A stretch of 64,000 nucleotides of DNA from the NCBI RefSeq assembly GCF_011386835.1, contig NC_088808.1, positions 22,568,001 through 22,632,000 on the forward strand. The letters are read 5' to 3'. The first letter of the stretch is position 1, and each line of letters begins with the position of its first letter. The notes under the pieces are model-generated. The model saw nothing but the letters and a program-made list of their open reading frames with translations. It did no database searches and had not been told where the DNA came from. A program made the position numbers and the translations under genes. This DNA comes from Chrysemys picta bellii. Its lineage: Eukaryota. This document shows positions 18,500 through 52,484 of this stretch, piece after piece.

Positions 18500-21400
18500 A
18501 ATAAAGTGTGTGTGTGTGTGTGTGTGTAAAAATGGATCGAACACAATCAATTGGGCTAAAAAGATATATTTATAAAAAGATTGCATAACGAGCCCATTAC
18601 AAGTAAATTGTATCACCTATGTACGGTGGACACACCTTGACTATGGAGTTCTTATAATTTTAATATTTCTTGTATGTTTTTTCTTCATTTGTTTAAAAAG
18701 ATACCAGAATAACAATTGTCTTGATTAAGCAAGACAAGAAACCTCATTGAGCAAGTATTGAGCTAACTAACGTGGCACAACTGGGGTCTGAAAGGTTAAA
18801 ATACTCCCAGTATAGCTTTAGATTACACATAACAGATAAAATTCACTAAGAGATTTAAATCAAGTGTTCCTTGTGGGTATACTTTACTGACTACAGACAC
18901 CGTGTGCAGGGAGTCTACTCTAAAGCTGACATCACATAAGTTTGGCTTGTTTTAATATGCCAGTCAGTCAATCAGAAAAGGTCCTAATGCACTCTTTAGA
19001 ACCCTAAGGGTTCTACCCAAGTCTATCCTTAAAGTAGTGTATTAATAAATAGATACCTACCTACCTTCCTTTTTCCTACAAAAGGAAGATTGGATTGGAT
19101 TCTCTATGGTATTAATCAATGTCTATTTTTAATTGGCTAGAAGGGATCTTGGTGAATGGCATTAGATGCTCCCTGCTCAGGGAACATGGGCCTGGGATAT
19201 TAATCCTACTTTATTTCATGGCAATGGAAAGCCTGACTAGGCTACAAATGTTTTAAATCAACATTAATTTTGCAAAATAAGTTAAGACCTTTTGTTAAAG
19301 CATCACAGAACACTCAGAAATACAGGTGGTAATTAAATATAGTCACCTGTGGTGTTTCATGACCTTTTCTACTATAGTTCTGAATAAAGTCCACTAGCCC
19401 ATGTACCACAGTCTTCACCGCCACCATTGCATTTTCCAGCTGCTCCCATGTTGGAGAAGTTGCATCTACAATTGATAAATTTAAAGCACGTTTTAACAAT
19501 AATTCCAATATCATCGTCTTAAATGAGACAACTTTTATATTACACCAGAAACACCCAATACAAGGATTAAGAGGAAACAATCTTGAACAGCAGCTTAAAA
19601 ACATCAATTGATGGGAACGGTTTAGAGCAGAAACAGAATTTATTGCCAGTATAGTTATATTTTTCATAATAAGAAAATGGAAAAAGTTTTTTTTTACATT
19701 TATTAGCACCATTCACATACCTGGATTAGGATCTATGTTTGCCAGAAGCTCTAAATGAGGCCTAAGTCTGTTTAAGTTTGCTGGATCACCTGTACGTTGC
19801 AAGACAATTGTCAACTCCTGTACACTTTTTGCAAATGATTCTGGAGACTGGAGCTGAAAATAAAAGTGACATTAATGCTCTTCATTCTATAAACTGGACA
19901 TTTTAACAGAAAAAGTATTCTCATTTTCTTTCAAGAGAGATGGGCTCCAAAATGATATAGGTAGTGTCTTCAGCTTGCATATAGTAATTATCAGTGGTGA
20001 GAGATTACAATTCTCAGCTCAGAATCTGCCCTATGAAGCTTCATCATAAGACACAAAACTAGAATAAGTGATTTTTTTTTGCACTGCTTCTCTGTGACTT
20101 TTGTAAACACTAAACATTCTGAAAAGGGCTTTGTACATAAAGATTACGTATGAAAAAACAGCTATCCTAGTTTCTAGTCATGTTAAAACTTAGTTAAAAT
20201 TAGAGGTTATAGTTTAAAAACTGCTTCAGCATTATACCCTTTAACTGTTAAATCTACCAAGAAAAGGACACTAAATCTATCCCATTGACGAACCTTGTCA
20301 ATAATGGATTGCATGTGTGACTTATGTGCCAGGTCACCATAAAGGAGGGAAGACCATTGTTCTGGTGATATTCGAAGTCCTGCTTCCATGGCAATGTGGA
20401 CAATTTGGGCATCATGTTCCCTCCGCAAAGCCTCATAACTCCGAAATTCCTCTTTAAGCTGCATCAGAGAAGAATCTTCATCCCTTTTGGTGACCTAAAA
20501 ACAAGAATTCAACAATGCTTAGAAACTTCATATTTCTTTAATTACAGCAGAGTCGATCAGAGTCCAGCTGATGTATAAACAAGTGTGCTGTGGTTTATAG
20601 CACTGGGTCTCAACCAGGGGTCCAGGGCCCCCTAGGGGGCCGCGAGCAGTTTCAGGAGGTCCTCCAAGCACGGTCAGTATTAGACTCACTGTGGCCCAGG
20701 GCAGAAATCCGAAGCCCCACCGCAGTTATTGTGGCACAGGTGGGCCATGGAGATTTTATAGCATGTTGGGGGGGCCTCAGAGAGAAAAAGGTTGAGAACC
20801 CTTTGTATAGAGAATCAACATTTAGTTCTTTCAACTATTCATCCCCCTGCAGGGTACTAGCATTACTGCGGGCTAGCCAGATAATCCAGTGTTGTATAGA
20901 TAGTCATTATGAGGACATGACATCGAGTCCAATCACTTCAACTAAGGCAGAAATTGGATTTGCTTAAGTCTTTGAAGATATGATGTGGTTTGCAGGATAT
21001 ACAGCTATAGGATTAGACCTTCAGTTCCACTATCATTTCGATATATCCAATGTTAAAAGACAATTCAAAGAGAGACAGGCAAAATTCAGAATTTAATTGG
21101 TAAATATGGGGCGGGAGGGGAGGGTGAAAGATGATCAAAAAGTTGCAGTGCACTCTATAATTTAGAGTATACCTTACAGAAAGACAATTAGTATCAGTAC
21201 AGTATTAAAAATACCTGGCTCTTACATACACCTTTCATCTGAGGATCACACTTCACTTTATATACATATTAAACCTCACAAATATTGGCATAGTCAGTAT
21301 TATCCCATTTTATTGATAGATAAACTGAGACACAGTAAAGCAAAATATCTTGGTTCAAGGTCACTAATTGCATCAGTGACACAGGCAAGAATAGAACCCA

Positions 21401-24400
21401 CAAGTTCTGGCTCCTAGTCCTTTAACTCATGTGCAACACTGCATCTTTATAAAAAGAAAAGTAAAGTAAAGATGTGATACACATTTTATTATGATTATCC
21501 AGAAAAACATCCAACAAATCTTATTTGGGGGGAAAAGGTGTTATTGCTAATGGGTCACAAATCAAATTACTGCTTACATTATGTGTATATCAAGTATGAT
21601 TTCTGATAGAAGGCCTAGCGTATATGCTGAAATAAAAATTTAACCATCTTCCCATGTCATCGAACATAAGAGCTTTTGTATCAAATATTGATATTCTATC
21701 AAAGATGTCCAGAACAAACTACTGTCTTTGTCAGCTGATATTATTTTATTGCCTTTCTGGGCCAAGTAATTTCTTAATGATCGTGCTCTACATTACCATA
21801 CAGGAAGGCAGAGTTCACTTCCTACTCCTGATCTCTTATTCTTCAGAGACGAAGAGTTGGGAGCATTCAGTGGAAAAAGAGGCATGGTATAATAATTGAG
21901 AGGTTTAAACATTTCATGTCCATTTTATAATGGATGCATCGGTACTGAATGCATTAAGATTCACTCTCCATATATTTCAATCCCACCATCTCTGTGTATG
22001 CAGAGACTATAGTTAGTGGGATTAGATGGGGTCGGCAACCTTTCAGAAGTGGGGTGCCGAGTCTTCATTTATTCACTCTAATTTAAGGTTTCGCATGCCA
22101 GTCATACATTTTAACATTTTTAGAAGGTCTCTTTCTATAAGTCTACATTATATAACTAAATTATTGTATGTAAACAAGGTTTTCAAAATGTTTAAGAAGC
22201 GTCATTTACAATTAAATTAAAATGCTGATCTTATGCCACCAGCCTGCTCAGCTTGCTGCCAGCCTGGGGTTCTGTTCACCTAGGCCAGCAGCGGGCTGAG
22301 CAGGGCCTATGGCCGGGACCCCAAACCTGGGGGGGGAGGGGGAGGGAGGGGGAAGAGGGTGTTTCAGGAGTCAGGGCAGAGGGCTGGGGTGTATGGGGGT
22401 GCAGGACAGAAGGCTGGGTGTGTGGGGGGTTCAAGGGTCAGGGCAGAGGGCTGGGGGGGTGCAGGACAGAAGGCTGGGTGTGTGGGGGGTTCAAGGGTCA
22501 GGGCAGAGGGCTGGGGGGGTGCAGGGCAGAAGGCCAGGTGTGTGTTGGGGTGTGGGGGGGTTCAGGGCAGAGGGCTGGGGGTGCAGGGCAGAAGGCTGGG
22601 GGTGTGTTGGTGTGAGGGTGCAGGGCAGAGGGCTGGGGGTGTGTTGGTGTGAGGGTGCAGGGCAGAGGGCTGGGGGTGTGTTGGTGTGAGGGTGCAGGGC
22701 AGAGGGCTGGGAGTATGGGGGTGCAGGGCAGAGGGCTGGGTGTGTGTTGGGGTGGGGGGTTCAGGGCAGAGGGCTGGGGGGGTGCAAGGCAGAAGGCTGG
22801 GTGTGTGGGGGGGGGTTCAGGGCAGAGGGCTGTGAGTGTGGGGGTGCAGGGCAGAAGGCTGGGGTGCTCGGCTCATGGGAGTGCTCCCAGCCCCCTGCCC
22901 TGAGCGGCTCAAGGCACGGGGCTGGAAGGGATATGCCCTGTTCCACCCCCTTCCCCCAGGCTCCGTCCCTACCTCTCTCTGCCTGCTCTACGGAGCTGTG
23001 TGCACGCTGCCGCTCGCTAGGGCCATCAGCTGATTGGTGCAGGGACGGAGAGGAGGAGGGGCAGGAAAGCACCGCTGGGGGAAGAAGAGGGGGATAGGGG
23101 AAGCTTGGCTGCTGCAGAACCAAGCTTCTGCCTCCTGCCCCCGCAGGGGAGAGCGGTGGGCGGGGAGGCTGAGTGGGGCTGGGGGCCGGGACTACGTCAG
23201 GGAACTGCGTGCCACTCAAAAATCGGCTTACGTGCCGTAGGTTGCCGACCCCTGGATTAGATGATTAATTGCTTTTAGATCACTTCTTGATGCTTCATTG
23301 TATCTTTAGATTGGGTAAAATCTGAATTTGAGTAGCATGTTGCAGGTGAAATATATTCATGCCATATTGTTCCTCAGAACTATATGCTAAACATTGCTAA
23401 TGTATCAAAAAGTTTTTAAAAAATAAAACTGGTATTAAGTTGCAAAAAATAAAAAGCAAGTTTTCATTTTAAATTATCCAATCTTTTACCTTAAAGCATG
23501 ATGCTCGATACAGTAGTTGCACAACATGACCAATGCTTGTTTTTGATGCCTGAGGAAATCTTGGTTCTAGTCTTTGCACAACAAAAAGTACCAAAACTTT
23601 TCTTGAGAGCGCAGAGCCATCTTCAAGTGCCAGTAACACAAGTTTCAAAGCCTCTTCTTGCATAGCTTTAAACAGATGTAAAAAAAAAATAGTCATAAGA
23701 AAAGTAAGACTACCACATATTAACAGTATACACAGGAACATTTGGTTTGAGAGTTCTTGTCCACAATATATCTTAACTATTTTTAGTCCAACAAAACAAC
23801 CACAGCAAAACACAGTCAGTGAAAACTTGCCCCATTTTAAGAAATCTGCTAGTCCAGATATGAAGCAGTACGCAGAAATGCTTGAAATGCAGTAAGTGGT
23901 TCCAGTTAAAAGAAGACAGAATGATTCAGGGCTCCCTGTTTTCAATAATATTGGCGCTTTTTAACTTTTGGTTTTACATTGCAGTCTCAACATTCAGCCT
24001 TTGTCATTTCATATAGCTTGCCAATTTTATACTAGGAAGCTGCATGAAATCTAGCGGTAGGAATGGCACAGGAATATTAGAACTACCCATCAGAATTACA
24101 AGTTCGTGGCATTGCCAACTTAAACAGAATCTTCTGATGAACCCTGCACTCAATTTGGCATCAATTTACTGATAACAGCTGGTTTATATCAAAGAGTCCA
24201 AAGCCATAAATTATAACTTAACTGCTTGTAGCACAGTATTACCATGCAACCTGGGCTGGTGGTTTTGGACTCTATGACTTAAGATATAGGCGCAAACATA
24301 ACTGAATGAGAAACCTTGTGCCTATGCACTAATCATAGTGCTCAGTACTATCTGCATGTTACATAACAGTACTGGGCTACAGACAATAAGGAAAATACAT

Positions 24401-30946: not shown

Positions 30947-31510
30947 AAGAGTCATTTTCCTGATCTGTGCTGGAACGTAATGTAAACAAAACATTAATTC
31001 CTCAAAGAGTATACCAGCAGCTTTTAAGACCTTATTTTGAATATTTAATCATCATAAATGAGGATCCTATTGAGCATGTGTTGACCTTCAGATTTCTTGT
31101 CAGGGAGGAATCTAATTAAATCAGCAAGAGCTGGGGAAAGTTCTCAACTCCTAAAACTTCAAGCAGCCATATTCAGAGGAGGCCTTCAGTACCGTTTCAC
31201 GCATGCCAACTATTCTGATATTTTTGCTCTCCAGTATCTTCAAAAAGGATTCTAACTAAAGTCTACTAATTATCAAGTCAGTTTCTTAAAAAAATATAAA
31301 GAAATGGTTGTACAGACCCGATTTTTCTGACAAGGAACACATTTAGGGATGTTCTGTTGAAAAACAAATTGCTCTAATAATCTAAAAATTGAACAAAATT
31401 AAAAAAAAGTGCCCTACCAAAAATCATTCCGACAAGAACTGTCAACTTAAAAATCTAGTCTCTTTTAAGAGACGAACTGAAAGTATTTTCAGATGCTACC
31501 ATTACCCTGG

Positions 31511-31602
31511 TCTTGCGTCTGATGAAGTGGGCATTCACCCACGAAAGCTTATGCTGCAATACTTCTGTTAGTCTTAAAGGTGCCACAGGACCCTTTGTTG
31601 CT
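31511..31602 (+). mobile_element. Penelope-like-element-derived 92-bp insertion with minimal hammerhead motif
   Basis: 11-bp direct repeat CATTACCCTGG both sides; GCGT-CTGATGA-A-GTGGG(cattca)CCCAC-GAAA-GCTT-ATGC. Confidence 0.85.
31515..31554 (+). ncRNA. Minimal type I hammerhead ribozyme motif
   Basis: Core CUGAUGA and GAAA, 5-bp stem II, palindromic AGCU stem III, stem I GCGU/AUGC. Confidence 0.75.
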
Positions 31603-32133
31603 CATTACCCTGGAGTTGTCCTGATCTTTCTGTGTGAAAAACCCACAAACATGATATAGAAAATGACTAAGCACAAAGTGCTGTCAAATACAGAAAGTAA
31701 ACAAACGAGTACTTTTTTTTATTGTTAACAATAGTAGGTAAAAATATTCAGAAAAATGTGATTTTTCAGCTGTTATCTTATTAAGAGCAGCATCTTAGAT
31801 TACTAAACCTGAAGATTTTAGAAGTCTAAATATACTGTTTGCTATTTATTATGTAACTATTGCATTTAGGACAGACTAGTTCAGATAAATCCAGTTTCAC
31901 TTTCTGCTTCTGCTGCAGGAGCAAAATGCTGTTGAGTTTGAGTTCACAACCCTGCAAGGGAATGTTTAAATTTTCCTATCAGCCACAATTAGTAAACTCG
32001 ACTTTCCTTCAAACATTAGTTTTTTTAAAACTTTATAATTTGTGAAGCGGATTCACAATGGAATGATATGGTATATGGGGCTCATATTTTAAACCAATTC
32101 AGGTATGCTTACTGGATCCTGTAACCTTCCTTA

Positions 32134-40126: not shown

Positions 40127-41410
40127 CTAATCATAGTCTATTTTGATTTGTGTAATTGTGTCAAGGTTTGGTTTGTCACCACCATTCCTTCCGTGAACTG
40201 AAGTCAAGTGCTTTTTTAGGGCAGATTTGTGTTTAAAGTCCATGTCACAACAATGGCATTTGTAAGGTCTGTCCCCACTGTGAATATTCAAGTGGTCCTG
40301 AAGCGTGCTTTTAGCAGTAAATGTCTTCAGACAAACCATGCATTGGAATGGGCGGATGCCCATGTGCCCTCGGATATGCCTATTGAGATTCTTCTTTTGT
40401 GTAAATGTTTTCCCACACTGTAAGCATAAGAAAAGTTTGTGCATTTTTAGGTGTCTCAGATAGTTTTCAAGGTGGACAAATCCTCGGGGACATTTAGGAC
40501 ACTGGTGCCGCCATGAATAACCAGAATCCTCCAGACTCTGAAACCCACTCACTACACTCGAGGTTCCTTCTGTATTGTCACTGACAAAGCCCTGAAAATG
40601 ATTCCCAGGCACTTCTGTAATTCTACTCTCAACAGTAGAATTTATCAGTGAATGTTGTGTTTCTGGAAAATATAAACTTGTTTTAGAGGAAGTGCAAGGC
40701 TGTGGAAAATGATCATTTTCCACATTGGCTGTGCTCATGGAATCCATTCTGAAGATACAAATTTCATCATCTTTATATCCTATTTCAACTGTGGAAATCT
40801 CTGGAGTTTTCATGTCCTTTCTTTCCGATATTAAACTTTGCATTGCAGGTTGTAAGGCATCCCCTTGCTCCCGTTTTACATTATATTCTATATTAACAGG
40901 GCTATCTTCAGAAATTTCAATTATTTCACAGTCTTTATCCAAATTGTCATCTTTATTTCTCAGCTCAGTGTCTGAGGAATGACATTTCTCTGTGTTCTGA
41001 TTACTGTTCTCCATAGAAGCATCAATTTCCAGATATTTAGACAATGCTTCGGTACATTTCTCTACAATGTGGACCATCTGAAGGTAACTTGCAGCAATGA
41101 GATATTTCAAAAGCTCCTTCTTTTTAACTTCGAGAGCACCAGTATAACAAGACAATAGTAACTTTCTGCCAACCTCAGCACTCTGCAATATGGTGATTCG
41201 CATCTGTTTCGACTGACTGAGCAAAAACTGATCCCTCATAAATGTGGAGCAGGCAGCAAAAATCACTTTGTGTCCATGAAACTCAGTGTCATTGATATAT
41301 ATTGATACATCACAAAATAAATTCTGCTGTCTCAAGAGGTTCATCTTTTGCAACACAGCATCCCCTTGCTGTTCAAACTGGAAATGCAGCACATCTGAGT
41401 CCGTAGCCAT
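40127..41410 (-). CDS. ZBTB6: Zinc finger and BTB domain-containing protein 6 (427 aa; BTB + 4 C2H2)
   Basis: MATDSDVLHFQFEQQGDAVLQKMNLLRQQNLFCDV BTB domain and four C2H2 fingers; acceptor ccatag|GTTGTCAACATG at 41419; synteny with RC3H2. Confidence 0.97.
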   Translation of the reverse strand: MATDSDVLHFQFEQQGDAVLQKMNLLRQQNLFCDVSIYINDTEFHGHKVIFAACSTFMRDQFLLSQSKQMRITILQSAEVGRKLLLSCYTGALEVKKKELLKYLIAASYLQMVHIVEKCTEALSKYLEIDASMENSNQNTEKCHSSDTELRNKDDNLDKDCEIIEISEDSPVNIEYNVKREQGDALQPAMQSLISERKDMKTPEISTVEIGYKDDEICIFRMDSMSTANVENDHFPQPCTSSKTSLYFPETQHSLINSTVESRITEVPGNHFQGFVSDNTEGTSSVVSGFQSLEDSGYSWRHQCPKCPRGFVHLENYLRHLKMHKLFLCLQCGKTFTQKKNLNRHIRGHMGIRPFQCMVCLKTFTAKSTLQDHLNIHSGDRPYKCHCCDMDFKHKSALKKHLTSVHGRNGGDKPNLDTITQIKIDYD

Positions 41411-42460: not shown

Positions 42461-45205
42461 GATCCTCCCCCATACCACAGCCCCCTCACTTGCCCACTCA
42501 GGTGCGGTGGCTCCACCAGGCAAAAGCCAAGCGTCACAGCTGGTCATGAAATCATCGGTGGGCACCTACAACTGGAGGGTGACGGCTGCCTCTCCAGCCT
42601 GGCAGCCCTGCTCCCGGTGGGCCTGCGGGCTATGGTGGTCTACTACATTCCTGCAGCCAGCCGAGTCTTAGGCCCATTCAAATGAAATTTGTGTAGAAAT
42701 GGGCCATTTTGCTTATGTCTGAAAAACACATACAGGCAAGGGGCTTAGGGGGAAGTTTAGAATAAGCATTGGCATCGTTACAATGCTTCCCAGCTAAGGC
42801 TCTCACCGCATTGTACTAACAACAGATTTAGCTACAGGGAGCAAAGCAACAGGTGAAAATGAAGCAGAAAGACGATCAATGAATTAGCCAAAGCCACAGA
42901 GCATACCAGAACCAGAAGATAAGCTCAAGAAAGTCAATGCCTTCTGTCCTTTAACCACAAAACTAGCCCTTAGAGTCCTTTAGGACAGAGTAGTGGAGTC
43001 AGTTGTAGTAATAAAGAGTAACTCATAATGGATATGGCACGCTCTTAGTGACATTTATTTAAGTCCCTCTGGGATATTTTCCAAGGTTGTCCATCAGTAA
43101 GGAATTCCAGATTTAGAAACAATTAAGGGTCTGCTCATAATTCAGGCATTTTAGTAGAAGGCAGAATTAGGCTCAGTAGTTGTAGGGGGAAAAATAGTTA
43201 CTTCTCATCACCCCTACTACCACTCACAGAATTATTGCTGTTTGGGGCAAAAAATTCAGAAACCCTACACCCTAAATGGGATATTTTAGATTACTTTGGT
43301 TTTCCTTTTAGATCACACAGTGAGTAATAGGCATTAGAAATCCTTGTGATCTGTACAGAACATACCATAAAAAAAAGCTAGTAGTGATACAAAAGTTGGC
43401 TCATCCCTTAAACAGTACTCAAAGAAAGAGTAGGCAGAAAGGTGCCTAAAAAGAGTTTAAAAAGCCATTGATGCACCAGCTTTGGTAATAAAAATGTGTA
43501 TTCAACTTCCTCCTAATCATTGAAGAGGTACTTAATTATTCTGTGGAGCATAAACTAGGATAAAGGAAATAGATGTTCAGTATATCCCTTCTCCATGGAG
43601 AATTTGACTGTCTCTATATCAGGTCAGTATAGTGAACTACAGTTCTGTACATTTGCTCATTTCATCTGCACCATTGTTTTTATTATTAAAAAAAAAAAGG
43701 AAAGAAAGACAACACAGAACTGCAGGATACCAGTAATATTTTTAATACAGTTTTGCTTTTTGTCACATTTTTAATTAAACTCTCTCTCCCTACTCTCCAT
43801 CCCTTCTCAAAATGACTCCAGTATTCACCACCAGTCCTCTCATGTTCTGTACTTTCGCATTCAATGTGCTCTATGTTCAAGTCAAATAAGACTACTGGTG
43901 TGACAAATTGTATAGGTTTATAAGTTTTGCCACAGAGGAGGAGGGGGAAAACCCACAAAAAACCTGATACTTCAGGTATGTCAGAGTCACTAACTTGTAA
44001 AATTCTTCTATAAAAAGGTAAGACAAACCTACAGTAGTTCTCTTACCCATATGTTCATCAAGTAAATAGGTTCTAAAAGCAAAAATAATCCTTACAAATG
44101 TGGCCAAAGTGTCTTTCAAATATTTTAGTAATGGTAGACTTTTCCCCTAATTATTTTTAGGATAGGCAGGAACTTGTACATTACACTCAGTTGTGAGATT
44201 ACCCATGTATCAGTAAATGGTGTTTGACACATTAACATACAGATTATGACAATTGCCAGAGAATTTATCTGACTAAGCAACAGCACTATCAACTTCAAGT
44301 GGATCTAGGCCAGTTAGAACTTTGCAATAAAAAGTGATTTAGAAGAAAGTTATACATACATGATTGGCTACATATTAAGTTCATTTTATTCTATAACAAA
44401 GCTGCCTTTGGATAGTCTGTATAAATAGATTTTATAACAATAGTGCCAGGCTCCATTTTAATTCTTAATTCAGGGGGAAAAAAACATTGACAAGATTTTC
44501 TTTGTCTCTAGTCCACATTAGAGCTATGATAACCCATTTTCCATATAATGAATATTATAGTATCAAATGTTTGAACAATATGGAAGATTCTGCCTGAAAT
44601 CAGATCCACATGCAATATTTCAGACATAATAACCATGGGGTAACAGCTCAAGCTGATTCTGTATGCAGGTTTTTGATTTTTTTCTTTAAAAAATTTAATT
44701 TATTTTTCCATGCAAGCTGTCTCTGAACCAAGATTCTGAAATAAATAGTTTCCTAAAATAGTTACATTTCAGAACTAAATTAATCTGCTATGATATTTGT
44801 TTCCCCCTCTCCATTGCCCATTACTTATTCCAAAACTGTACACATAACAGGCAACTATAGCCGTTTAAAACTTTCTATCTGAAAAGGTGATTGTGTCCTT
44901 TCATAACATTTTGCAACATTAGCACTTCATTCACTGTAATGCTTGTTTTGGGAACTTCTGACTTTTGTATGCCCCTTTTCTCAAGACCCAAGCTGTCTTT
45001 TGATAATGAAATATACATTATTTTCTGCAATAAAATGCTTTGGTCATATTTTAGTTTAGCATTGTTACAGTTCTAGACTTAAACAGCTGCATTAGAAGTA
45101 ATACTTGATCCAAATGTGAAAAGCAGTTCTTTACCAAGGGTCAAGCAGTAGATTATTAGACCACACTGCATTTCAATTCAGTAAGAGTGCTACTCTTCTG
45201 TAAAT

Positions 45206-45259
45206 CTTCTCTTCTGACTTCTGTTAGTCTCAAAGGTGCCACAGGACCCTCTGTTGCTT
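45206..45259 (+). mobile_element. 5'-truncated copy of the Penelope-derived mini-element (no hammerhead)
   Basis: acttctgttagtctcaaaggtgccacaggaccctctgttgct; 12-bp flanking repeat TCTTCTGTAAAT (45194-45205, 45260-45271). Confidence 0.85.
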
Positions 45260-46048
45260 TCTTCTGTAAATGGTATTCTTCAGATGAGATATTAAAGTAT
45301 GGTCCTTTCACTCCAACTACGACGGCAGCCATCTAGATTAAAACTTCCATGACACTTTTCAAAACAAGTACAGCATAATCTCAACCCCCAGTTAACATTC
45401 CATTCCCTCTAGGTCTGAGATTCAAAGATGTGTAAAAGAGCTATTGCTGATCACAGTCAATAACTGATGCATTAATCTACAGCCAATGACACCTGTATCT
45501 TACTCTGTCTAAACTCTTACCTTGTAAAGCTCTAGGATTCATGAACTATGTAGGGTGGTAGCTAAATTCTAGTCTACTTTTCAAGATGAAGTGCATACTT
45601 TTAGGATCCAACAGAGACTATGATCTAACTTTATATTTTCCCCCCAGTTAACTGACATACATAGCTCCTAGTAGAGCTCTAGGAAGAGTTTAAAAAAAAA
45701 AAAAAGTATGGAATTACACATTTCAGCTGCTGAAAGAGATTCTTTTCACAATGTCATAAATAAAGCAATATTCCCCACTTCAGCTTTGCTTTAAAACCAA
45801 ATATGAAAGTCACAATTGCTGTGGTTTATGTGAAGCAATGTTTATAGGAGACAGAACAATAATTTTATTTTGAAGTCTTTACCATGTCTTAGTACATACA
45901 GTGATAGGTGGTCCTTTAGTGCTTGTCTTCACTACAAGTTAGCATGCTTTAGTTACTGCATTCAAGCTAGCCTAGCTTGAGTGAGAGCAACCACACTTCA
46001 AAGCAATACGGGAGTTTCACAGCCTGATTTGATTAGTTGCTGTTGAGT

Positions 46049-48544: not shown

Positions 48545-49864
48545 TTAATTAACACAGGTGCTATCACTCCTTAAATTGAGCACAGCCTGGGCCAATTTCC
48601 CTGCATCCAGTATCTGGCTTGCATCAGCTTGTTGACAGACCTTACTGTCTGTAGCAGTGCTACAGCTGAAAGAATCAAAGTCCACCGTTATATCTTGAAC
48701 ATTCCTTTCATTGGCATTGTCAAAACTATTTTTTCCATGTAACTGTTTAAGGTGTTTCCTCAGAACAGGTTTATGTGCAAAGACCATGTCACAATAGTTA
48801 CATTTATGAGGCTTGTCTCCACTGTGCAGATTGAGATGGTCCTGTAAAGAACATTTCTGAGAGAAGGTTTTCCCACAGATTTTACACTGAAAAGGTTTGA
48901 TCCCTGCATGCACTCTCATGTGTCGGTGGAGATTGCCTTTCTGAGTGAACGTCTTACCACACAGCAGACACATGAACAGTTTATGCATTTTTAAATGATT
49001 AGCATAGTTTTCCAGGTGCCGGAATACTCTGGTACACTTGGGACACTGGTGGTGCCATTGGAGACCCTTGTCTATACCTCTGTTGTTAGGACCAAACATG
49101 TCTTTAGAGGCCATGATGAAATTGTCACTGCCAGCATAAGAAAGGGCATAGTTGTGGAGATGATTTTGTTCTATTTCACTCGTTCTGTTTTCCACAGTGG
49201 AATTGATTAAAAAGTGCTGAGGCTCTGATGAATGTAAAGCAGTTTGTTCAGAAGAAATAAACTGGGTTTGATCTTTTTTATTTCTAACCTCAGACACCTC
49301 CCCAATAGACTCCACCTTGACAATCTGAATGTCACTATCTTCCATGTCCATACTGTCTTCTGAGGTTTGAATACATAGTGAATCCTGTTGCAGAGAGTCC
49401 TCATCTCCTTGGTGTTCTTTCAACTCGGAAGAATCGCTTTGCTGTTCACAATCCTCCTTGCTCTCCAATGGCTTCTTAGGTTTTATAAACTTCCAGAGAG
49501 CCTGTGTACATCGTTCCACAATGTGGCTCATCTGAAGAAAGCTTGCAGCAGTCAAGTAATTTACCAGCTCCATCTCAGGAAACTCCAGAATACCACTGTA
49601 GCAGGACAAAAGCAACTGTCTCCCCACTTCTGAACTCTGCAGAATGGAGATTTTAACCTCTCTGGAGTCATTCAACAAAAACTGATCTCTTAAAAAGGGG
49701 GAGCCTGCAGCAAACACAATTTTATGCCCATGAACCTCAACATTATCTATGTGAACTACGACATCACAAAACTTATTTTCTTCCCTCAGTTTGTTCATTT
49801 TTTGTAACATTGAATCTCCATAATTGTCAAACTTGAAGTGAAGGATATCTGATCTTTCGGACAT
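48545..49864 (-). CDS. ZBTB26: Zinc finger and BTB domain-containing protein 26 (439 aa; BTB + 4 C2H2)
   Basis: True start MSERSDILHFKFDNYGDSMLQKMNKL at 49864, after acceptor ctttag|ATCTGCCAAAATG (49874); four C2H2 fingers. Confidence 0.97.
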   Translation of the reverse strand: MSERSDILHFKFDNYGDSMLQKMNKLREENKFCDVVVHIDNVEVHGHKIVFAAGSPFLRDQFLLNDSREVKISILQSSEVGRQLLLSCYSGILEFPEMELVNYLTAASFLQMSHIVERCTQALWKFIKPKKPLESKEDCEQQSDSSELKEHQGDEDSLQQDSLCIQTSEDSMDMEDSDIQIVKVESIGEVSEVRNKKDQTQFISSEQTALHSSEPQHFLINSTVENRTSEIEQNHLHNYALSYAGSDNFIMASKDMFGPNNRGIDKGLQWHHQCPKCTRVFRHLENYANHLKMHKLFMCLLCGKTFTQKGNLHRHMRVHAGIKPFQCKICGKTFSQKCSLQDHLNLHSGDKPHKCNYCDMVFAHKPVLRKHLKQLHGKNSFDNANERNVQDITVDFDSFSCSTATDSKVCQQADASQILDAGKLAQAVLNLRSDSTCVN

Positions 49865-51345
49865 TTTGGCAGATCTAAAGAACAAAAGCAAAATAAAAAT
49901 AAAGAAACAGTATCTGAGGAAACTAATGGATGTAATCATGCAAGTTAAAAAGGGGCCAATGGTGCAGGTTAAACATACATATTTTACAAAACATTTTCTT
50001 ATATTAATAAAAACACGCAAGACTATTAAAAATGAAATAATTTTAAAAGTTAAGTTTACTTTGAATATCTTAATGATGTTTACCTTTCCACATTTCACAC
50101 AACTTGGACAGTGAAAGTAACCTAATCAATTTCTAGACTATTTCATATTCTAATCCACATGCAGTAGTATAACGTTGCAATGTCCCCAACACTACAGAAG
50201 AACGTTTATTTAAAATATTTAGTTATATAGATACACTATTTCTTTGGAATTTAAAATAAAACCATATAAATATTTCTACTGGTTTAAACTTCTGTAAAAG
50301 CTTGCTTTCGTATTAACAAAAACTAAGTTTTTGGCTCAATTTGAGCCTTCAATGTCCCTTTAGTTTTTATCAATAGTTTTGCTTTAAAGCATGAACAATT
50401 TCCATAGGCAATTGATCTCTCAATGTTACACTTAAGCACCTCTCAGAGAGGACAGTGTAATATTAAACCAAGCTTTTTAACATTCATGTACTGAGCAGTA
50501 GAAATATGGTCTATGAATCAAACTAAGAAAAATAGTTAAAATTCTTCCACCCTCAACACCTCCTGCTTGCCTGGTGGTATTTCTAAATAAAATACAGCCT
50601 GTTACACATCTAAAATGTGCAGAATTCTAGTACTGAACTTAATTTTTTAGACCAGATATAGTCACAATGGAAGTGATTGGGATCTCATTCATCTTTATGC
50701 ATTTGTCCAATGTCCATTATCAAGCACTGAAGCAAGCATTTTTATTTTGAGAGTTTTTAAGGGTGAGAAATAAAGTCAAACTGCTAGATAGCCCTGTTCT
50801 CTCACATTCACCACCTAATAAGCAGTCGCACCAGAAAACACTTTCTCACAGGAAACACACTGCTTCCTAAACTGTAATTACTTTTAGATGGCTATTAATG
50901 CTTGAATGGAAAATTACTCATTGTTAGAAAAATGATATTCCAGAAACAATACCCCACAAAGGTGCGTGAAGATTTCCATCATACCCCTCAAGTAATCTGA
51001 CCTATACAAGAAGTAGATCATACTGTTAATGCAAATTCCAGATCTGGCTATCCTCCAGTTTTGTATTCTTGGCTAGCCTGAGGAGGGAGGGAGAAAGCTC
51101 TCTGCATCTTTCTGAGTTCTACATGCTATTTCCACTCAATATCACAAGTCACAGACATCATCCTTCCAGCTGACAGGCAGACGTGACTCCTATTCAAAAC
51201 AGGTTAGGTCTAACAGAGGAATCTTACTTCTTCAGTTTAGTTCAACAGAGACATTTCAAAATTAACTAGATATGGTACCTTAGTTTTCTTGTTCAAGCAT
51301 CACAGAGAAGGTTTCTGCAAATTGCTCAATGTGTTACCAGTTTAA

Positions 51346-51439
51346 GGCAACAGAGGGTCCTGTGGCACCTTTGAGACTAACAGAAGTACTGGGAGCATAA
51401 GCTTTCGTGGGTCAGAACCTCACTTCTTCAGATGCAAGA
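51346..51439 (-). mobile_element. Penelope-like-element-derived 94-bp insertion with minimal hammerhead motif
   Basis: 11-bp direct repeat TACCAGTTTAA (51335-51345, 51440-51450); same family as 31511-31602. Confidence 0.87.
51395..51435 (-). ncRNA. Minimal type I hammerhead ribozyme motif, sense to ZBTB26 pre-mRNA
   Basis: GCAU-CUGAAGA-A-GUG(A)GGU(ucug)ACCCAC-GAAA-GCUU-AUGC. Confidence 0.75.
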
Positions 51440-52161
51440 TACCAGTTTAAAGGATTCTGGATGAATTACCTAAGGAAAGAGAAGAAAAGCCACGGTTAGC
51501 CAAAGGCTTATTTGCCTTACAACTTTAAAATGTCTTTAAAGAAAGAAGAATGATTTGAAAGTAATTAACTGTTTACATGTCCACACTACTATACGTGTGT
51601 TTTGAAAAACATTTTTCCAATACTGAAGAAGAACAGTATTGGAAAACTACTGGGGGTTAGTCAGAATTCCTCTCCAATTTATAAAATACTAGGCCTGCAA
51701 AGGGCCAAAAGCACCTGCCTACCTGCATTTGGCTCCATCTTTCTTTGTGGCTTTGCAACCAATAACAAGGGTAACATCCTTTTATTCCCCTTCTCATCCT
51801 CTCTTGGGTGGCTGCACCTTGTTCTTACAAGGAATTTCAGCTAATGAGCTATTAGAGCTTTCCTAGTTTTTACTTTATGTAATTCCACAATATAAAAGGA
51901 AGAAACCTGAGCAGCCCAGAGGCCATCTAGACCAGTGTCCTGGGTCTGGCACTCACACTATCAGCTGCTAGAGGGGAAAGCGAAAAGCCCCATAGGGGAC
52001 AGTTATGGGATTATTCGCCCACAGAGAAAGTCACTTCCTCGCCCTCCTTGGCTTAGTGGTTGGTTCATGACCCTGAGGAAAAACGGTCTAAAAATCCACC
52101 CTTAACAAGTGGGGCTGAGTGCTACACCGCCCAGGCTCCCCCCCTTCCCCACTCCACTCAC

Positions 52162-52300
52162 CTCCTTACTCCTCACACTCCCCCCTCCTCCTTCTCTCCC
52201 TAGCCGCCCCCACCGTGTCCCCTCCCCGCAAGGTTGGGAAGGGGCCACTCTCCGGATCCGGCCCCGGGCGGAGGCGTTGGCCGGAGGACACCGGAACCGG
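52162..52300 (-). other. ZBTB26: ZBTB26 non-coding exon 1 (5' end approximate)
   Basis: Strong donor GAG|gtgagt at 52162/52161. Confidence 0.65.
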
Positions 52301-52484
52301 AAGTACCCCTCCACAAATCTTCTTCCGGGGCTCCTGCCCCTGCCCGGTTTCTTCACGAACCCACCGGGAGCCGCCGCGGCCGCTGCCGGAGCAGCCGCCG
52401 CCGGGGCCCCGGAAGTGCATCTTCCTCTGACCCGGAAGACTCTCCCTGTCCCGTCCCCCTCCCCTCCGGCCTGGGTCACGTGGT

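What the first reader, a model, noticed from the sequence alone, without database searches (positions are those of the whole stretch)
51346..51439. Second hammerhead element lies sense within the ZBTB26 intron
Seen: core CUGAAGA and GAAA intact, stem I GCAU/AUGC perfect, stem II 6 bp with one bulged A and a UCUG loop, 11-bp TSD. It lies between the ZBTB26 donor (52161) and acceptor (49875) on the transcribed strand. Inference: it is in every ZBTB26 pre-mRNA, where co-transcriptional cleavage could compete with splicing or release a small RNA. Minimal monomers are usually weak, so activity may need a second copy in trans.
Basis: partly seen in the sequence, partly recalled or inferred. Interest (0 to 1): 0.75.

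Follow-up and report, generated by a model that had tools for sequence, protein, structure and literature searches.

The report
Penelope retroelement hammerhead inside ZBTB26 5'UTR exon
This is a young, dead 94-base fragment of a Penelope-like retrotransposon that carries that family's well-known minimal hammerhead ribozyme motif; it landed inside a small untranslated exon of the turtle ZBTB26 gene, and nothing suggests the ribozyme cuts there.

Summary
Window 51346-51439 (minus strand) carries an intact hammerhead core and sits between exact 11-bp target-site duplications. A strict descriptor finds two such loci in the window against 0.013 expected by chance.

It is one copy of a short retroposed repeat. 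Copy A (31511-31602) and the 5'-truncated copy C (45206-45259) are the others. The motif has every hallmark of the minimal type-I hammerhead of Penelope-like elements, described in 2014 with turtles included. This scan already holds 377 'hammerhead' notes for this genome. An earlier follow-up on other DNA of it reached the same class.

Two points are new.
- **Age:** four other turtle genomes have a clean empty site, so the insertion is lineage-specific and young.
- **Position:** it is not in a plain intron. Spliced ZBTB26 transcripts of a sister species show an 86-nt 5'UTR exon here. The element sits 30 nt inside the orthologue of that exon, and both splice sites are intact.

Self-cleavage is unsupported. 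Single minimal hammerheads gave no detectable cleavage in vitro. The anole Poseidon ribozyme needs the element's own protein. No second sense copy lies in the transcript.

The kind is known and interest is low.

The parts
51346..51439 (-). 94-nt retroposed unit (copy B): a severely 5'-truncated Penelope-like element fragment, made of the minimal hammerhead plus a 49-nt tail
   Evidence: Flanked by an exact 11-bp TSD. Absent, with a single target copy, from four other turtle genomes. Two related copies lie in the window.
51395..51435 (-). Minimal type-I hammerhead motif. Helix I 51435-51432 / 51398-51395; core CUGAAGA 51431-51425; unpaired A 51424; helix II 51423-51407; GAAA 51406-51403; GC 51402-51401; U16.1 51400; U17 51399. 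Predicted cut between 51399 and 51398.
   Evidence: Pair list and coordinates. Strict descriptor against the null.
51346..51394 (-). Tail of the unit. It corresponds to the start of the element's reading frame in copy A, and in copy B the frame is lost. Its 3' end (..GTTGC[C/T]) is shared by all three copies.
   Evidence: Alignment A1; translations.
51440..51450 (.). Target-site duplication, copy at the element's 5' side (TACCAGTTTAA on the plus strand)
   Evidence: A single copy is present in L002, L011, L012 and L013.
51335..51345 (.). Target-site duplication, copy at the element's 3' side
51279..51469 (-). Orthologue of ZBTB26 5'UTR exon 2. It is 86 nt in the sister species and 191 nt here because of the 105 inserted or duplicated bases. 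Acceptor AG 51471-51470 and donor GT 51278-51277 are intact.
   Evidence: Spliced contigs L003-L010, which are 100% identical to L002; coordinates; alignment A2. Use of the exon in the window's own species was not tested.
52162..52417 (-). ZBTB26 exon 1 (5'UTR, GC-rich), as far as the sister-species contigs reach. Donor GT at 52161-52160.
51720..51819 (-). Alternative first exon, seen in one sister-species contig (L008)
48545..49874 (-). ZBTB26 last exon. It begins at 49874 after the AG at 49876-49875. The ATG is at 49864, and the CDS of 439 aa runs to the stop at 48545.
   Evidence: Pfam BTB + zf-C2H2. The cluster is named ZBTB26 in turtles and birds. Coordinates.
31511..31602 (+). Copy A of the same repeat. 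It has a canonical CUGAUGA core, a 5-bp helix II, and an ATG inside the core that opens a 27-codon frame to the end of the unit. TSD CATTACCCTGG at 31500-31510 and 31603-31613.
45206..45259 (+). Copy C: a 5'-truncated, tail-only copy with no hammerhead. Its tail is 100% identical to copy B over 41 nt. TSD TCTTCTGTAAAT at 45194-45205 and 45260-45271. It is also absent from the other turtle loci.

Best explanation
The element is a dead-on-arrival fragment of a Penelope-like retrotransposon. It was inserted by target-primed reverse transcription with an 11-bp duplication. This happened in the window species' lineage after its split from the two ~96%-identical turtles L011 and L012.

The fragment is the piece around the junction of the element's terminal repeat and its reading frame. 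In this retroelement class that piece carries a minimal type-I hammerhead with no helix III of its own. The motif was therefore inherited from the element, not evolved for ZBTB26.

It landed in sense orientation, 30 nt inside the small 5'UTR exon 2 of ZBTB26.

Active folding needs two copies to pair through the palindromic AGCU (helix III) and through swapped helix I strands. In the one system tested biochemically it also needed the element's protein. As a lone copy in ZBTB26 RNA it is most likely catalytically silent or nearly so.

Its realistic effects are ordinary ones: a 5'UTR exon lengthened by 105 nt, an extra 18-codon upstream reading frame, or altered use of that exon.

Shown here: the motif, the TSD, the repeat family, the empty sites, and the exon in the sister species. 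Inferred: the Penelope origin, the lack of activity, and the effect on the transcript.
For: **Motif and repeat family**
- Motif and TSD.
- Not chance: two loci observed against 0.013 expected.
- Three copies share a constant 3' end. One is 5'-truncated, and each has its own 11-12-bp TSD. This is the signature of target-primed reverse transcription.

**Match to the published class**
- That paper reports such motifs in turtles.
- Copy A has an ATG in the CUGAUGA box, and its frame stays open across the cut site to the end of the unit. This resembles the anole Poseidon element, where the ORF starts at the hammerhead and reverse transcription starts internally a short way into the ORF (PMC11167929).

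**Age and position**
- Empty sites in L002, L011, L012 and L013, with flanks about 96% identical to the two closest genomes.
- Exon 2 is seen in eight spliced contigs.

**Against activity**
- Single motifs are inactive in vitro.
- The anole ribozyme is protein-dependent, and no reads end at its cut site.
- Helix I has probability 0.018 in the exon context. The double-hammerhead conformation scores -16.9 kcal/mol, against -26.7 for the best dimer and -20.2 for two monomers.
Against: - No reverse-transcriptase or GIY-YIG reading frame of a Penelope element lies in the window. No full-length element with this tail could be fetched. The Penelope assignment therefore rests on architecture and literature, not on a direct link.
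- Copies A and B start at the same nucleotide. Random 5' truncation does not predict that, so a small non-autonomous unit remains possible.
- Nearest-neighbour energies model hammerhead cores poorly.
- This genome holds very many related motifs (377 scan notes mention hammerheads), so partner RNAs in trans may be plentiful.
- The 27-codon open frame of copy A would arise by chance about one time in four.
Confidence: 0.85

Rival explanations
1. The hammerhead is active in ZBTB26 RNA. It cleaves co-transcriptionally, alone or paired in trans with other copies, and so competes with splicing, lowers ZBTB26 output or releases a small RNA.
For: - The core is intact and in sense orientation.
- Helix I and the AGCU palindrome are compatible with copy A-type partners.
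- Related motifs are very abundant in this genome.
- Dimeric constructs of such motifs cleave weakly in vitro. PMC6765202 cites Lunse et al. for cleavage as dimers.
- If exon 2 is retained, the motif would be in the mature 5'UTR, where a cut would remove the cap.
Against: - A single motif showed no detectable cleavage, and dimers were slow and mostly needed non-physiological Mg2+.
- The anole Poseidon ribozyme needs the element's protein, and no RNA-seq ends were found at its cut site.
- There is no second sense copy in the ZBTB26 transcript. Copy C lacks the hammerhead, and both other copies are on the other strand.
- The fold is disfavoured in context.
- Helix II carries a bulged A that copy A lacks.
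- The insertion is lineage-specific, so it is not conserved for function.
Confidence: 0.08
2. The 92-94-nt unit is a discrete non-autonomous element, that is a retrozyme-like or SINE-like derivative mobilised by Penelope enzymes. It is not a truncated copy of an autonomous element.
For: - Copies A and B share both ends to the nucleotide.
- Earlier first-reader notes report the same '5' end at the hammerhead edge' elsewhere in this genome.
- A 2026 preprint argues that animal non-LTR retrozymes derive from Penelope terminal repeats and occur as monomers too. It gives consensus lengths of 51-972 bp, averaging 176 bp in reptiles.
Against: - There is no tandem arrangement here, whereas retrozymes are defined by tandem units.
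- I saw no match to Pol III promoter boxes when reading the sequence by eye.
- Copy A keeps a start codon and an open frame like the start of an autonomous element's ORF.
- Copy C is an ordinary 5' truncation of the same tail.
- A shared 5' end can also come from run-off at a fixed RNA 5' end after internal initiation.
Confidence: 0.2
3. The match is a chance resemblance to a hammerhead in ordinary intronic sequence.
For: No Rfam hammerhead model scores it. The minimum-free-energy fold is no better than shuffled sequence, z = +0.83.
Against: The strict descriptor gives 2 loci observed against 0.013 expected. Both loci belong to one TSD-flanked repeat family, and the A-U to G-U change in helix I between them still allows pairing. 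All class-specific hallmarks that the search did not impose are present.
Confidence: 0.01

Closest known systems
Minimal type-I hammerheads (min-HHR) of metazoan Penelope-like elements (Cervera & De la Pena 2014, PMC4209133; Lunse, Weinberg & Breaker as cited in PMC6765202)
   Same: [quoted passage not shown] It occurs mostly as dispersed single motifs in truncated copies. The class is reported in turtles.
   Different: Nothing essential. This copy has N7 = A and a bulged A in helix II; the 2014 paper notes such a bulge for the Drosophila virilis variant. A link to a full-length element was not shown here.
Poseidon element of Anolis carolinensis (PAc; Frangieh et al. 2024, PMC11167929)
   Same: The hammerhead straddles the junction of terminal repeat and ORF. 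The ORF starts at the ribozyme and the cut site lies a few dozen nt into the ORF. Insertions end at an internal reverse-transcription start site. Copy A of the turtle family shows an ATG in the core and an open frame to the unit's end.
   Different: In PAc the start codon is said to follow G8, at the start of stem II. In copy A it is A6-U7-G8. No sequence comparison with PAc was possible. In copy B the start codon is lost (AAG) and a stop follows two codons later.
Conserved intronic hammerheads of amniotes (HH9 in RECK, HH10; De la Pena & Garcia-Robles 2010, cited in PMC4209133)
   Same: A type-I hammerhead lying sense inside a host gene's transcribed region.
   Different: Those have a stable helix III and loop-loop contacts, are detected by their own Rfam models, and are conserved across amniotes. 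This one has none of these features and is absent from four other turtle genomes.
Animal non-LTR retrozymes, including newt satellite 2 (PMC7229834; 2026 preprint 10.64898/2026.07.22.740005)
   Same: Type-I hammerheads with a weak helix III that act as dimers, and an evolutionary link to Penelope terminal repeats.
   Different: Retrozymes are tandem arrays that give small circular RNAs. This is a single TSD-flanked unit with one ribozyme.

Membership tests
Penelope-type minimal hammerhead (min-HHR) | Conserved core: C3 U4 G5 A6 N7 G8 A9, G12 A13 A14, A15.1, U16.1, H17 | tested here: met
   CUGAAGA at 51431-51425, GAAA at 51406-51403, U at 51400, U at 51399.
Penelope-type minimal hammerhead (min-HHR) | [quoted passage not shown] | tested here: met
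   A at 51424; G 51423 pairs with C 51407. The criterion comes from PMC4209133.
Penelope-type minimal hammerhead (min-HHR) | Long helix II (6-8 bp) and short helix I (4-5 bp) | tested here: met
   Helix II is 6 bp with one bulged A. Helix I is 4 bp, GCAU/AUGC.
Penelope-type minimal hammerhead (min-HHR) | No stable helix III, with palindromic 15.x-16.x / loop 3 allowing a dimer | tested here: met
   A15.1-G-C-U16.1 reads AGCU, which is self-complementary. A 2-nt loop cannot close as a monomer. The double-hammerhead structure can be written for two copies, but it is not the lowest-energy dimer.
Penelope-type minimal hammerhead (min-HHR) | Self-cleavage as a dimer | not testable with these tools
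   Needs a bench assay.
Penelope-like element insertion | Target-site duplication, and 5'-truncated copies sharing one 3' end | tested here: met
   TSDs of 11, 11 and 12 bp. All three copies end at ..GTTGC[C/T]. Copy C is 5'-truncated.
Penelope-like element insertion | Telomerase-like RT plus GIY-YIG endonuclease ORF, with pseudo-LTRs in the same family | tested here: inconclusive
   The seven ORFs of 150 aa or more scanned show no RT or GIY-YIG domain. No tool could fetch further copies from this eukaryotic genome.
Penelope-like element insertion | Hammerhead overlapping the ORF start (the Poseidon arrangement) | tested here: inconclusive
   Copy A has an ATG in the CUGAUGA box and 27 open codons to the unit's end, but such an open frame has about a 1-in-4 chance expectation. 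Copy B has AAG and an early stop.
Canonical type-I hammerhead (Rfam Hammerhead_1) and HH9/HH10 | Score at or above the family's gathering threshold, with a hairpin helix III | tested here: not met
   No hammerhead match at gathering score over the whole window. None at E<=10 in 1.2 kb or in 66 nt.
Conserved intronic amniote hammerheads | Orthologous conservation across species | tested here: not met
   Empty site in L002, L011, L012 and L013.
Non-LTR retrozyme | Tandem units, each with a hammerhead | tested here: not met
   Single unit, no adjacent copy.

The most novel reading that the evidence does not exclude
Suppose exon 2 is still spliced into ZBTB26 mRNA in this turtle. The mature 5'UTR would then carry a sense Penelope hammerhead. 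Penelope RNAs or Penelope protein, when expressed, could drive cleavage in trans-dimers and remove the cap from the message. Output of a conserved transcription-factor gene would thus be tied to retroelement activity. Close relatives with the empty site would serve as a natural control.
Probability: 0.04. Interest if true: 0.6.

Novelty: already known. Interest (0 to 1): 0.22.

Why it matters
As a class it does not change anything. Minimal hammerheads in Penelope-like elements have been known since 2014, and this genome is full of them.

The modest value lies in the local facts. The insertion is dated and species-restricted, and it interrupts an expressed 5'UTR exon of a conserved gene in sense orientation. 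Empty-site relatives are available for comparison. That makes it a convenient natural test of whether a lone minimal hammerhead does anything in a host mRNA, and of how a 105-nt retroelement insertion into a short UTR exon is handled by splicing.

The shared 5' end of the 92-94-nt units may also bear on where Penelope template RNAs begin.

Tried and rejected
- **Rfam scans:** the whole window at gathering score, 1.2 kb at E<=10, and 66 nt at E<=10. None gave a hammerhead hit. This is expected for a motif without helix III, so it does not count against the motif.
- **Single-strand MFE fold:** no better than shuffles and not the hammerhead fold.
- **Cofold and eval of the double hammerhead:** not the favoured dimer. 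This is weak evidence only.
- **Bacterial promoter/terminator scan:** nothing found, and irrelevant here.
- No run could be chosen, so read laying could not be used. There is therefore no RNA or DNA read evidence for the window's own species.
- **Pfam scan for a Penelope RT/EN:** I scanned seven window ORFs of 150 aa or more (ZBTB26 and ZBTB6 were scanned). There was no RT/EN; only a Roquin ROQ-domain exon came up.
- **Orthologous site of copy A:** I tried to reach it through the ZBTB6 protein, but the exact-protein look-up returned only the window's own genome.
- **Papers not held:** the supplement of PMC4209133 (turtle motif sequences) and the Lunse et al. paper.
- **The search of earlier findings by sequence:** blank.
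- **Weak similarity at 51219-51250:** it resembles a tail/head junction of the element. I rejected it as a tandem remnant because it is also present in L002, which lacks the element.
- **Spliced model:** I built no joined spliced model of ZBTB26. Exons were compared one by one, by reference.

Full report
**1. What is in the sequence**

On the minus strand, window 51439..51346 is a 94-nt unit. It reads as follows.
- Four bases, then helix I 5' strand GCAU.
- The core CUGAAGA, then one unpaired A.
- A 6-bp helix II with one bulged A and a UCUG loop, closed by G10.1-C11.1.
- GAAA, then GC, U16.1 and U17.
- Helix I 3' strand AUGC, then a 49-nt tail.

The unit lies between two exact copies of the 11-bp TACCAGTTTAA, at 51335-51345 and 51440-51450. 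All items of the observation are confirmed.

**2. More than chance**

A loose pattern hit only two loci in the window, against 0.40 matches expected. I then wrote a stricter descriptor that also demands helix II, U16.1, H17 and a 4-bp helix I. It finds exactly the same two loci, with core C3 at 31519 (+) and 51431 (-). The mean in 300 first-order Markov simulations of the window is 0.013, and no simulation reached two.

No Rfam hammerhead model scores the motif at any threshold tried. Its single-strand MFE fold is unremarkable, z = +0.83. Both results are expected for a hammerhead with no helix III of its own.

**3. It is a copy of a retroposed repeat**

BLAST of the unit against the window finds two relatives.
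- Copy A, 31511-31602 (+). It is 92% identical over the last 66 nt, has a canonical CUGAUGA and a 5-bp helix II, and is flanked by the 11-bp TSD CATTACCCTGG.
- Copy C, 45206-45259 (+). It is a 5'-truncated, tail-only copy. Its tail is 100% identical to copy B over 41 nt, and it is flanked by the 12-bp TSD TCTTCTGTAAAT.

All three end at the same place (..GTTGC[C/T]). A constant 3' end, variable 5' truncation and TSDs of 11-12 bp are the signature of target-primed reverse transcription. Between copies A and B, helix I changes from A-U to G-U, which still pairs.

**4. Which retroelement**

Cervera and De la Pena (PMC4209133) described minimal hammerheads in the terminal repeats of Penelope-like elements. 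These occur massively as single motifs in truncated copies, and the paper reports them in turtle and snakes. The traits they list as emerging beyond their search descriptor are all present here:
- a conserved G10.1-C11.1 pair;
- a long helix II and a short helix I;
- a palindromic 15.x-16.x.

Frangieh et al. (PMC11167929) studied the anole Poseidon element. They showed that its ORF begins at the hammerhead and that the cut site lies 26 nt downstream of the start codon. Reverse transcription starts internally, a short way into the ORF. This explains why insertions end in a tail that is the start of the ORF.

Copy A fits this layout. An ATG lies inside CUGAUGA, and 27 codons stay open across the cut site to the end of the unit. 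An open frame of that length is expected by chance about one time in four, so this is consistency, not proof. In copy B the ATG is AAG and a stop follows two codons later.

I could not link the tail to a full-length element. The ORFs of 150 aa or more that I scanned show no RT or GIY-YIG domain, and no tool reaches the rest of this eukaryotic genome. Earlier notes of this scan place many such motifs in Penelope-like insertions in the same genome. I treat them as leads only.

**5. Whose genome, and how old**

The ORF at 48548-49864 (-) has BTB and C2H2 domains. It belongs to a cluster named ZBTB26 in turtles and birds.

The exact protein is encoded in GCA_011386835.2, record CM062335.1. Its locus L001 is 100% identical to the window. 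From memory only, this is a painted-turtle assembly.

Four other turtle genomes carry the orthologous site with a single copy of the 11-bp target and no element (alignment A2).
- L002 (GCA_016161935.1).
- L011 and L012 (GCA_013100865.1 and GCA_027887155.1). Their protein is named for Trachemys scripta elegans.
- L013 (GCA_015237465.2). Its protein is named for Chelonia mydas.

L011 and L012 are about 96.2% identical to the window over 11 kb. Copy C is also missing from all four. Copies B and C are therefore young, lineage-specific insertions, and the family was active recently in this lineage.

**6. Not a plain intron**

Eight Logan contigs (L003-L010, runs SRR278805xx) encode the same protein and are 100% identical to L002. 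They lack two GT-AG-bounded stretches of the genome, so they are assembled spliced transcripts. Their structure is:
- exon 1, window ..52162;
- an 86-nt exon 2;
- exon 3, from 49874, with the ATG at 49864.

One contig (L008) starts instead in an alternative first exon, window 51819..51720. All eight include exon 2.

In the window, the orthologue of exon 2 is 51469..51279. Its acceptor AG (51471-51470) and donor GT (51278-51277) are unchanged. The element plus one TSD copy (105 nt) sits 30 nt inside it.

Whether the window's species still uses the exon is unknown.

If the exon is retained, the mature 5'UTR gains the hammerhead. It also gains an 18-codon upstream frame that starts at the AUG of helix I (51398) and ends in the TSD. 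The ancestral exon already holds a 6-codon upstream frame.

I built no joined spliced model. Exons were compared by reference.

**7. Does it cut?**

Nothing here shows that it does, and several things argue against it.
- The motif cannot close helix III alone, because A15.1 and U16.1 enclose only GC. The active form needs two copies, with AGCU pairing to AGCU and helix I strands swapped.
- No second sense copy lies in the ZBTB26 transcript.
- In the nearest-neighbour model the double hammerhead scores -16.9 kcal/mol. Two monomers score -20.2 and an alternative extended dimer scores -26.7. In the 191-nt exon, helix I has a pairing probability of 0.018. These energies describe hammerhead cores poorly, so this is weak evidence.
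- In vitro, a single Penelope minimal hammerhead showed no detectable cleavage. Dimers or trimers cleaved weakly, mostly at non-physiological Mg2+.
- The anole ribozyme cleaved only when the element's protein was added. No RNA-seq reads began or ended at its cut site.
- A review summarises the same picture and cites Lunse et al. for cleavage as dimers. That paper itself was not held.

The proposed biological consequence is unsupported.

**8. Left unexplained**

Copies A and B start at the same nucleotide, 4 nt before helix I. Simple 5' truncation does not predict that, and other first-reader notes report the same pattern elsewhere in this genome.

My untested suggestion is as follows. The reverse transcriptase initiates at the internal tail site on the 5'-proximal copy of that site in an element mRNA whose 5' end lies there. 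It then runs off after about 92 nt.

The alternatives are a stop at the folded ribozyme, or a small non-autonomous unit.

**9. Verdict**

The object is an ordinary, recently inserted, dead fragment of a Penelope-like element with the family's known minimal hammerhead. The scan has met this class many times in this genome.

The local twist is a sense insertion into a 5'UTR exon of ZBTB26, with empty-site relatives for comparison. It is worth a line in an annotation and could serve as a natural test case. It is not a new kind of system.

Noticed in passing
window 31511-31602 (+), TSD 31500-31510 / 31603-31613: Copy A of the same repeat, with a canonical CUGAUGA core. An ATG inside the core opens a 27-codon frame that runs to the end of the unit. 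It is about 92% identical to copy B, so it may be an older insertion or a different subfamily. Its presence in other turtles could not be checked.
   Followed up: partly
window 45206-45259 (+), TSD 45194-45205 / 45260-45271: Copy C, a tail-only 5'-truncated copy preceded by 11 extra bases. Its tail is 100% identical to copy B and it is absent from the four other turtle loci. It is therefore a second young insertion within 6 kb, downstream of ZBTB26.
   Followed up: yes
window 51439 and 31511 (the 5' ends of copies B and A): Both hammerhead-bearing copies begin at the identical nucleotide (TCTTGC..). Random 5' truncation does not predict this. The possible causes are run-off at a fixed RNA 5' end after internal initiation, a reverse-transcriptase stop at the ribozyme, or a discrete mini-element.
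   Followed up: no
window 51720-51819 (-): An alternative ZBTB26 first exon, used in one sister-species transcript contig (L008). It lies between exon 1 and exon 2.
   Followed up: partly
window 19954-20069 (-): SNORD90 box C/D snoRNA (Rfam 57.4 bits against a gathering score of 41). It lies on the same strand as a Roquin ROQ-domain exon at 23472-23945, consistent with an intronic snoRNA of RC3H2.
   Followed up: no
window 40130-41410 (-): A 427-aa BTB + C2H2 zinc-finger ORF, about 67% identical at DNA level to parts of ZBTB26. It is presumably the neighbouring paralogue ZBTB6. The exact protein was found only in the window's own assembly.
   Followed up: partly
window 51219-51250 (-): A short stretch resembling the element's tail end followed by CUGAAGAAGU.., with 83-88% identity over 17-18 nt. 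It is also present in L002, which lacks the element, so it is old sequence and probably a chance match.
   Followed up: yes
window 51398-51342 (-): The AUG of helix I opens an 18-codon upstream reading frame that ends at a TAA in the TSD. It matters only if the lengthened exon 2 is kept in the mRNA. The ancestral exon already has a 6-codon upstream frame.
   Followed up: partly
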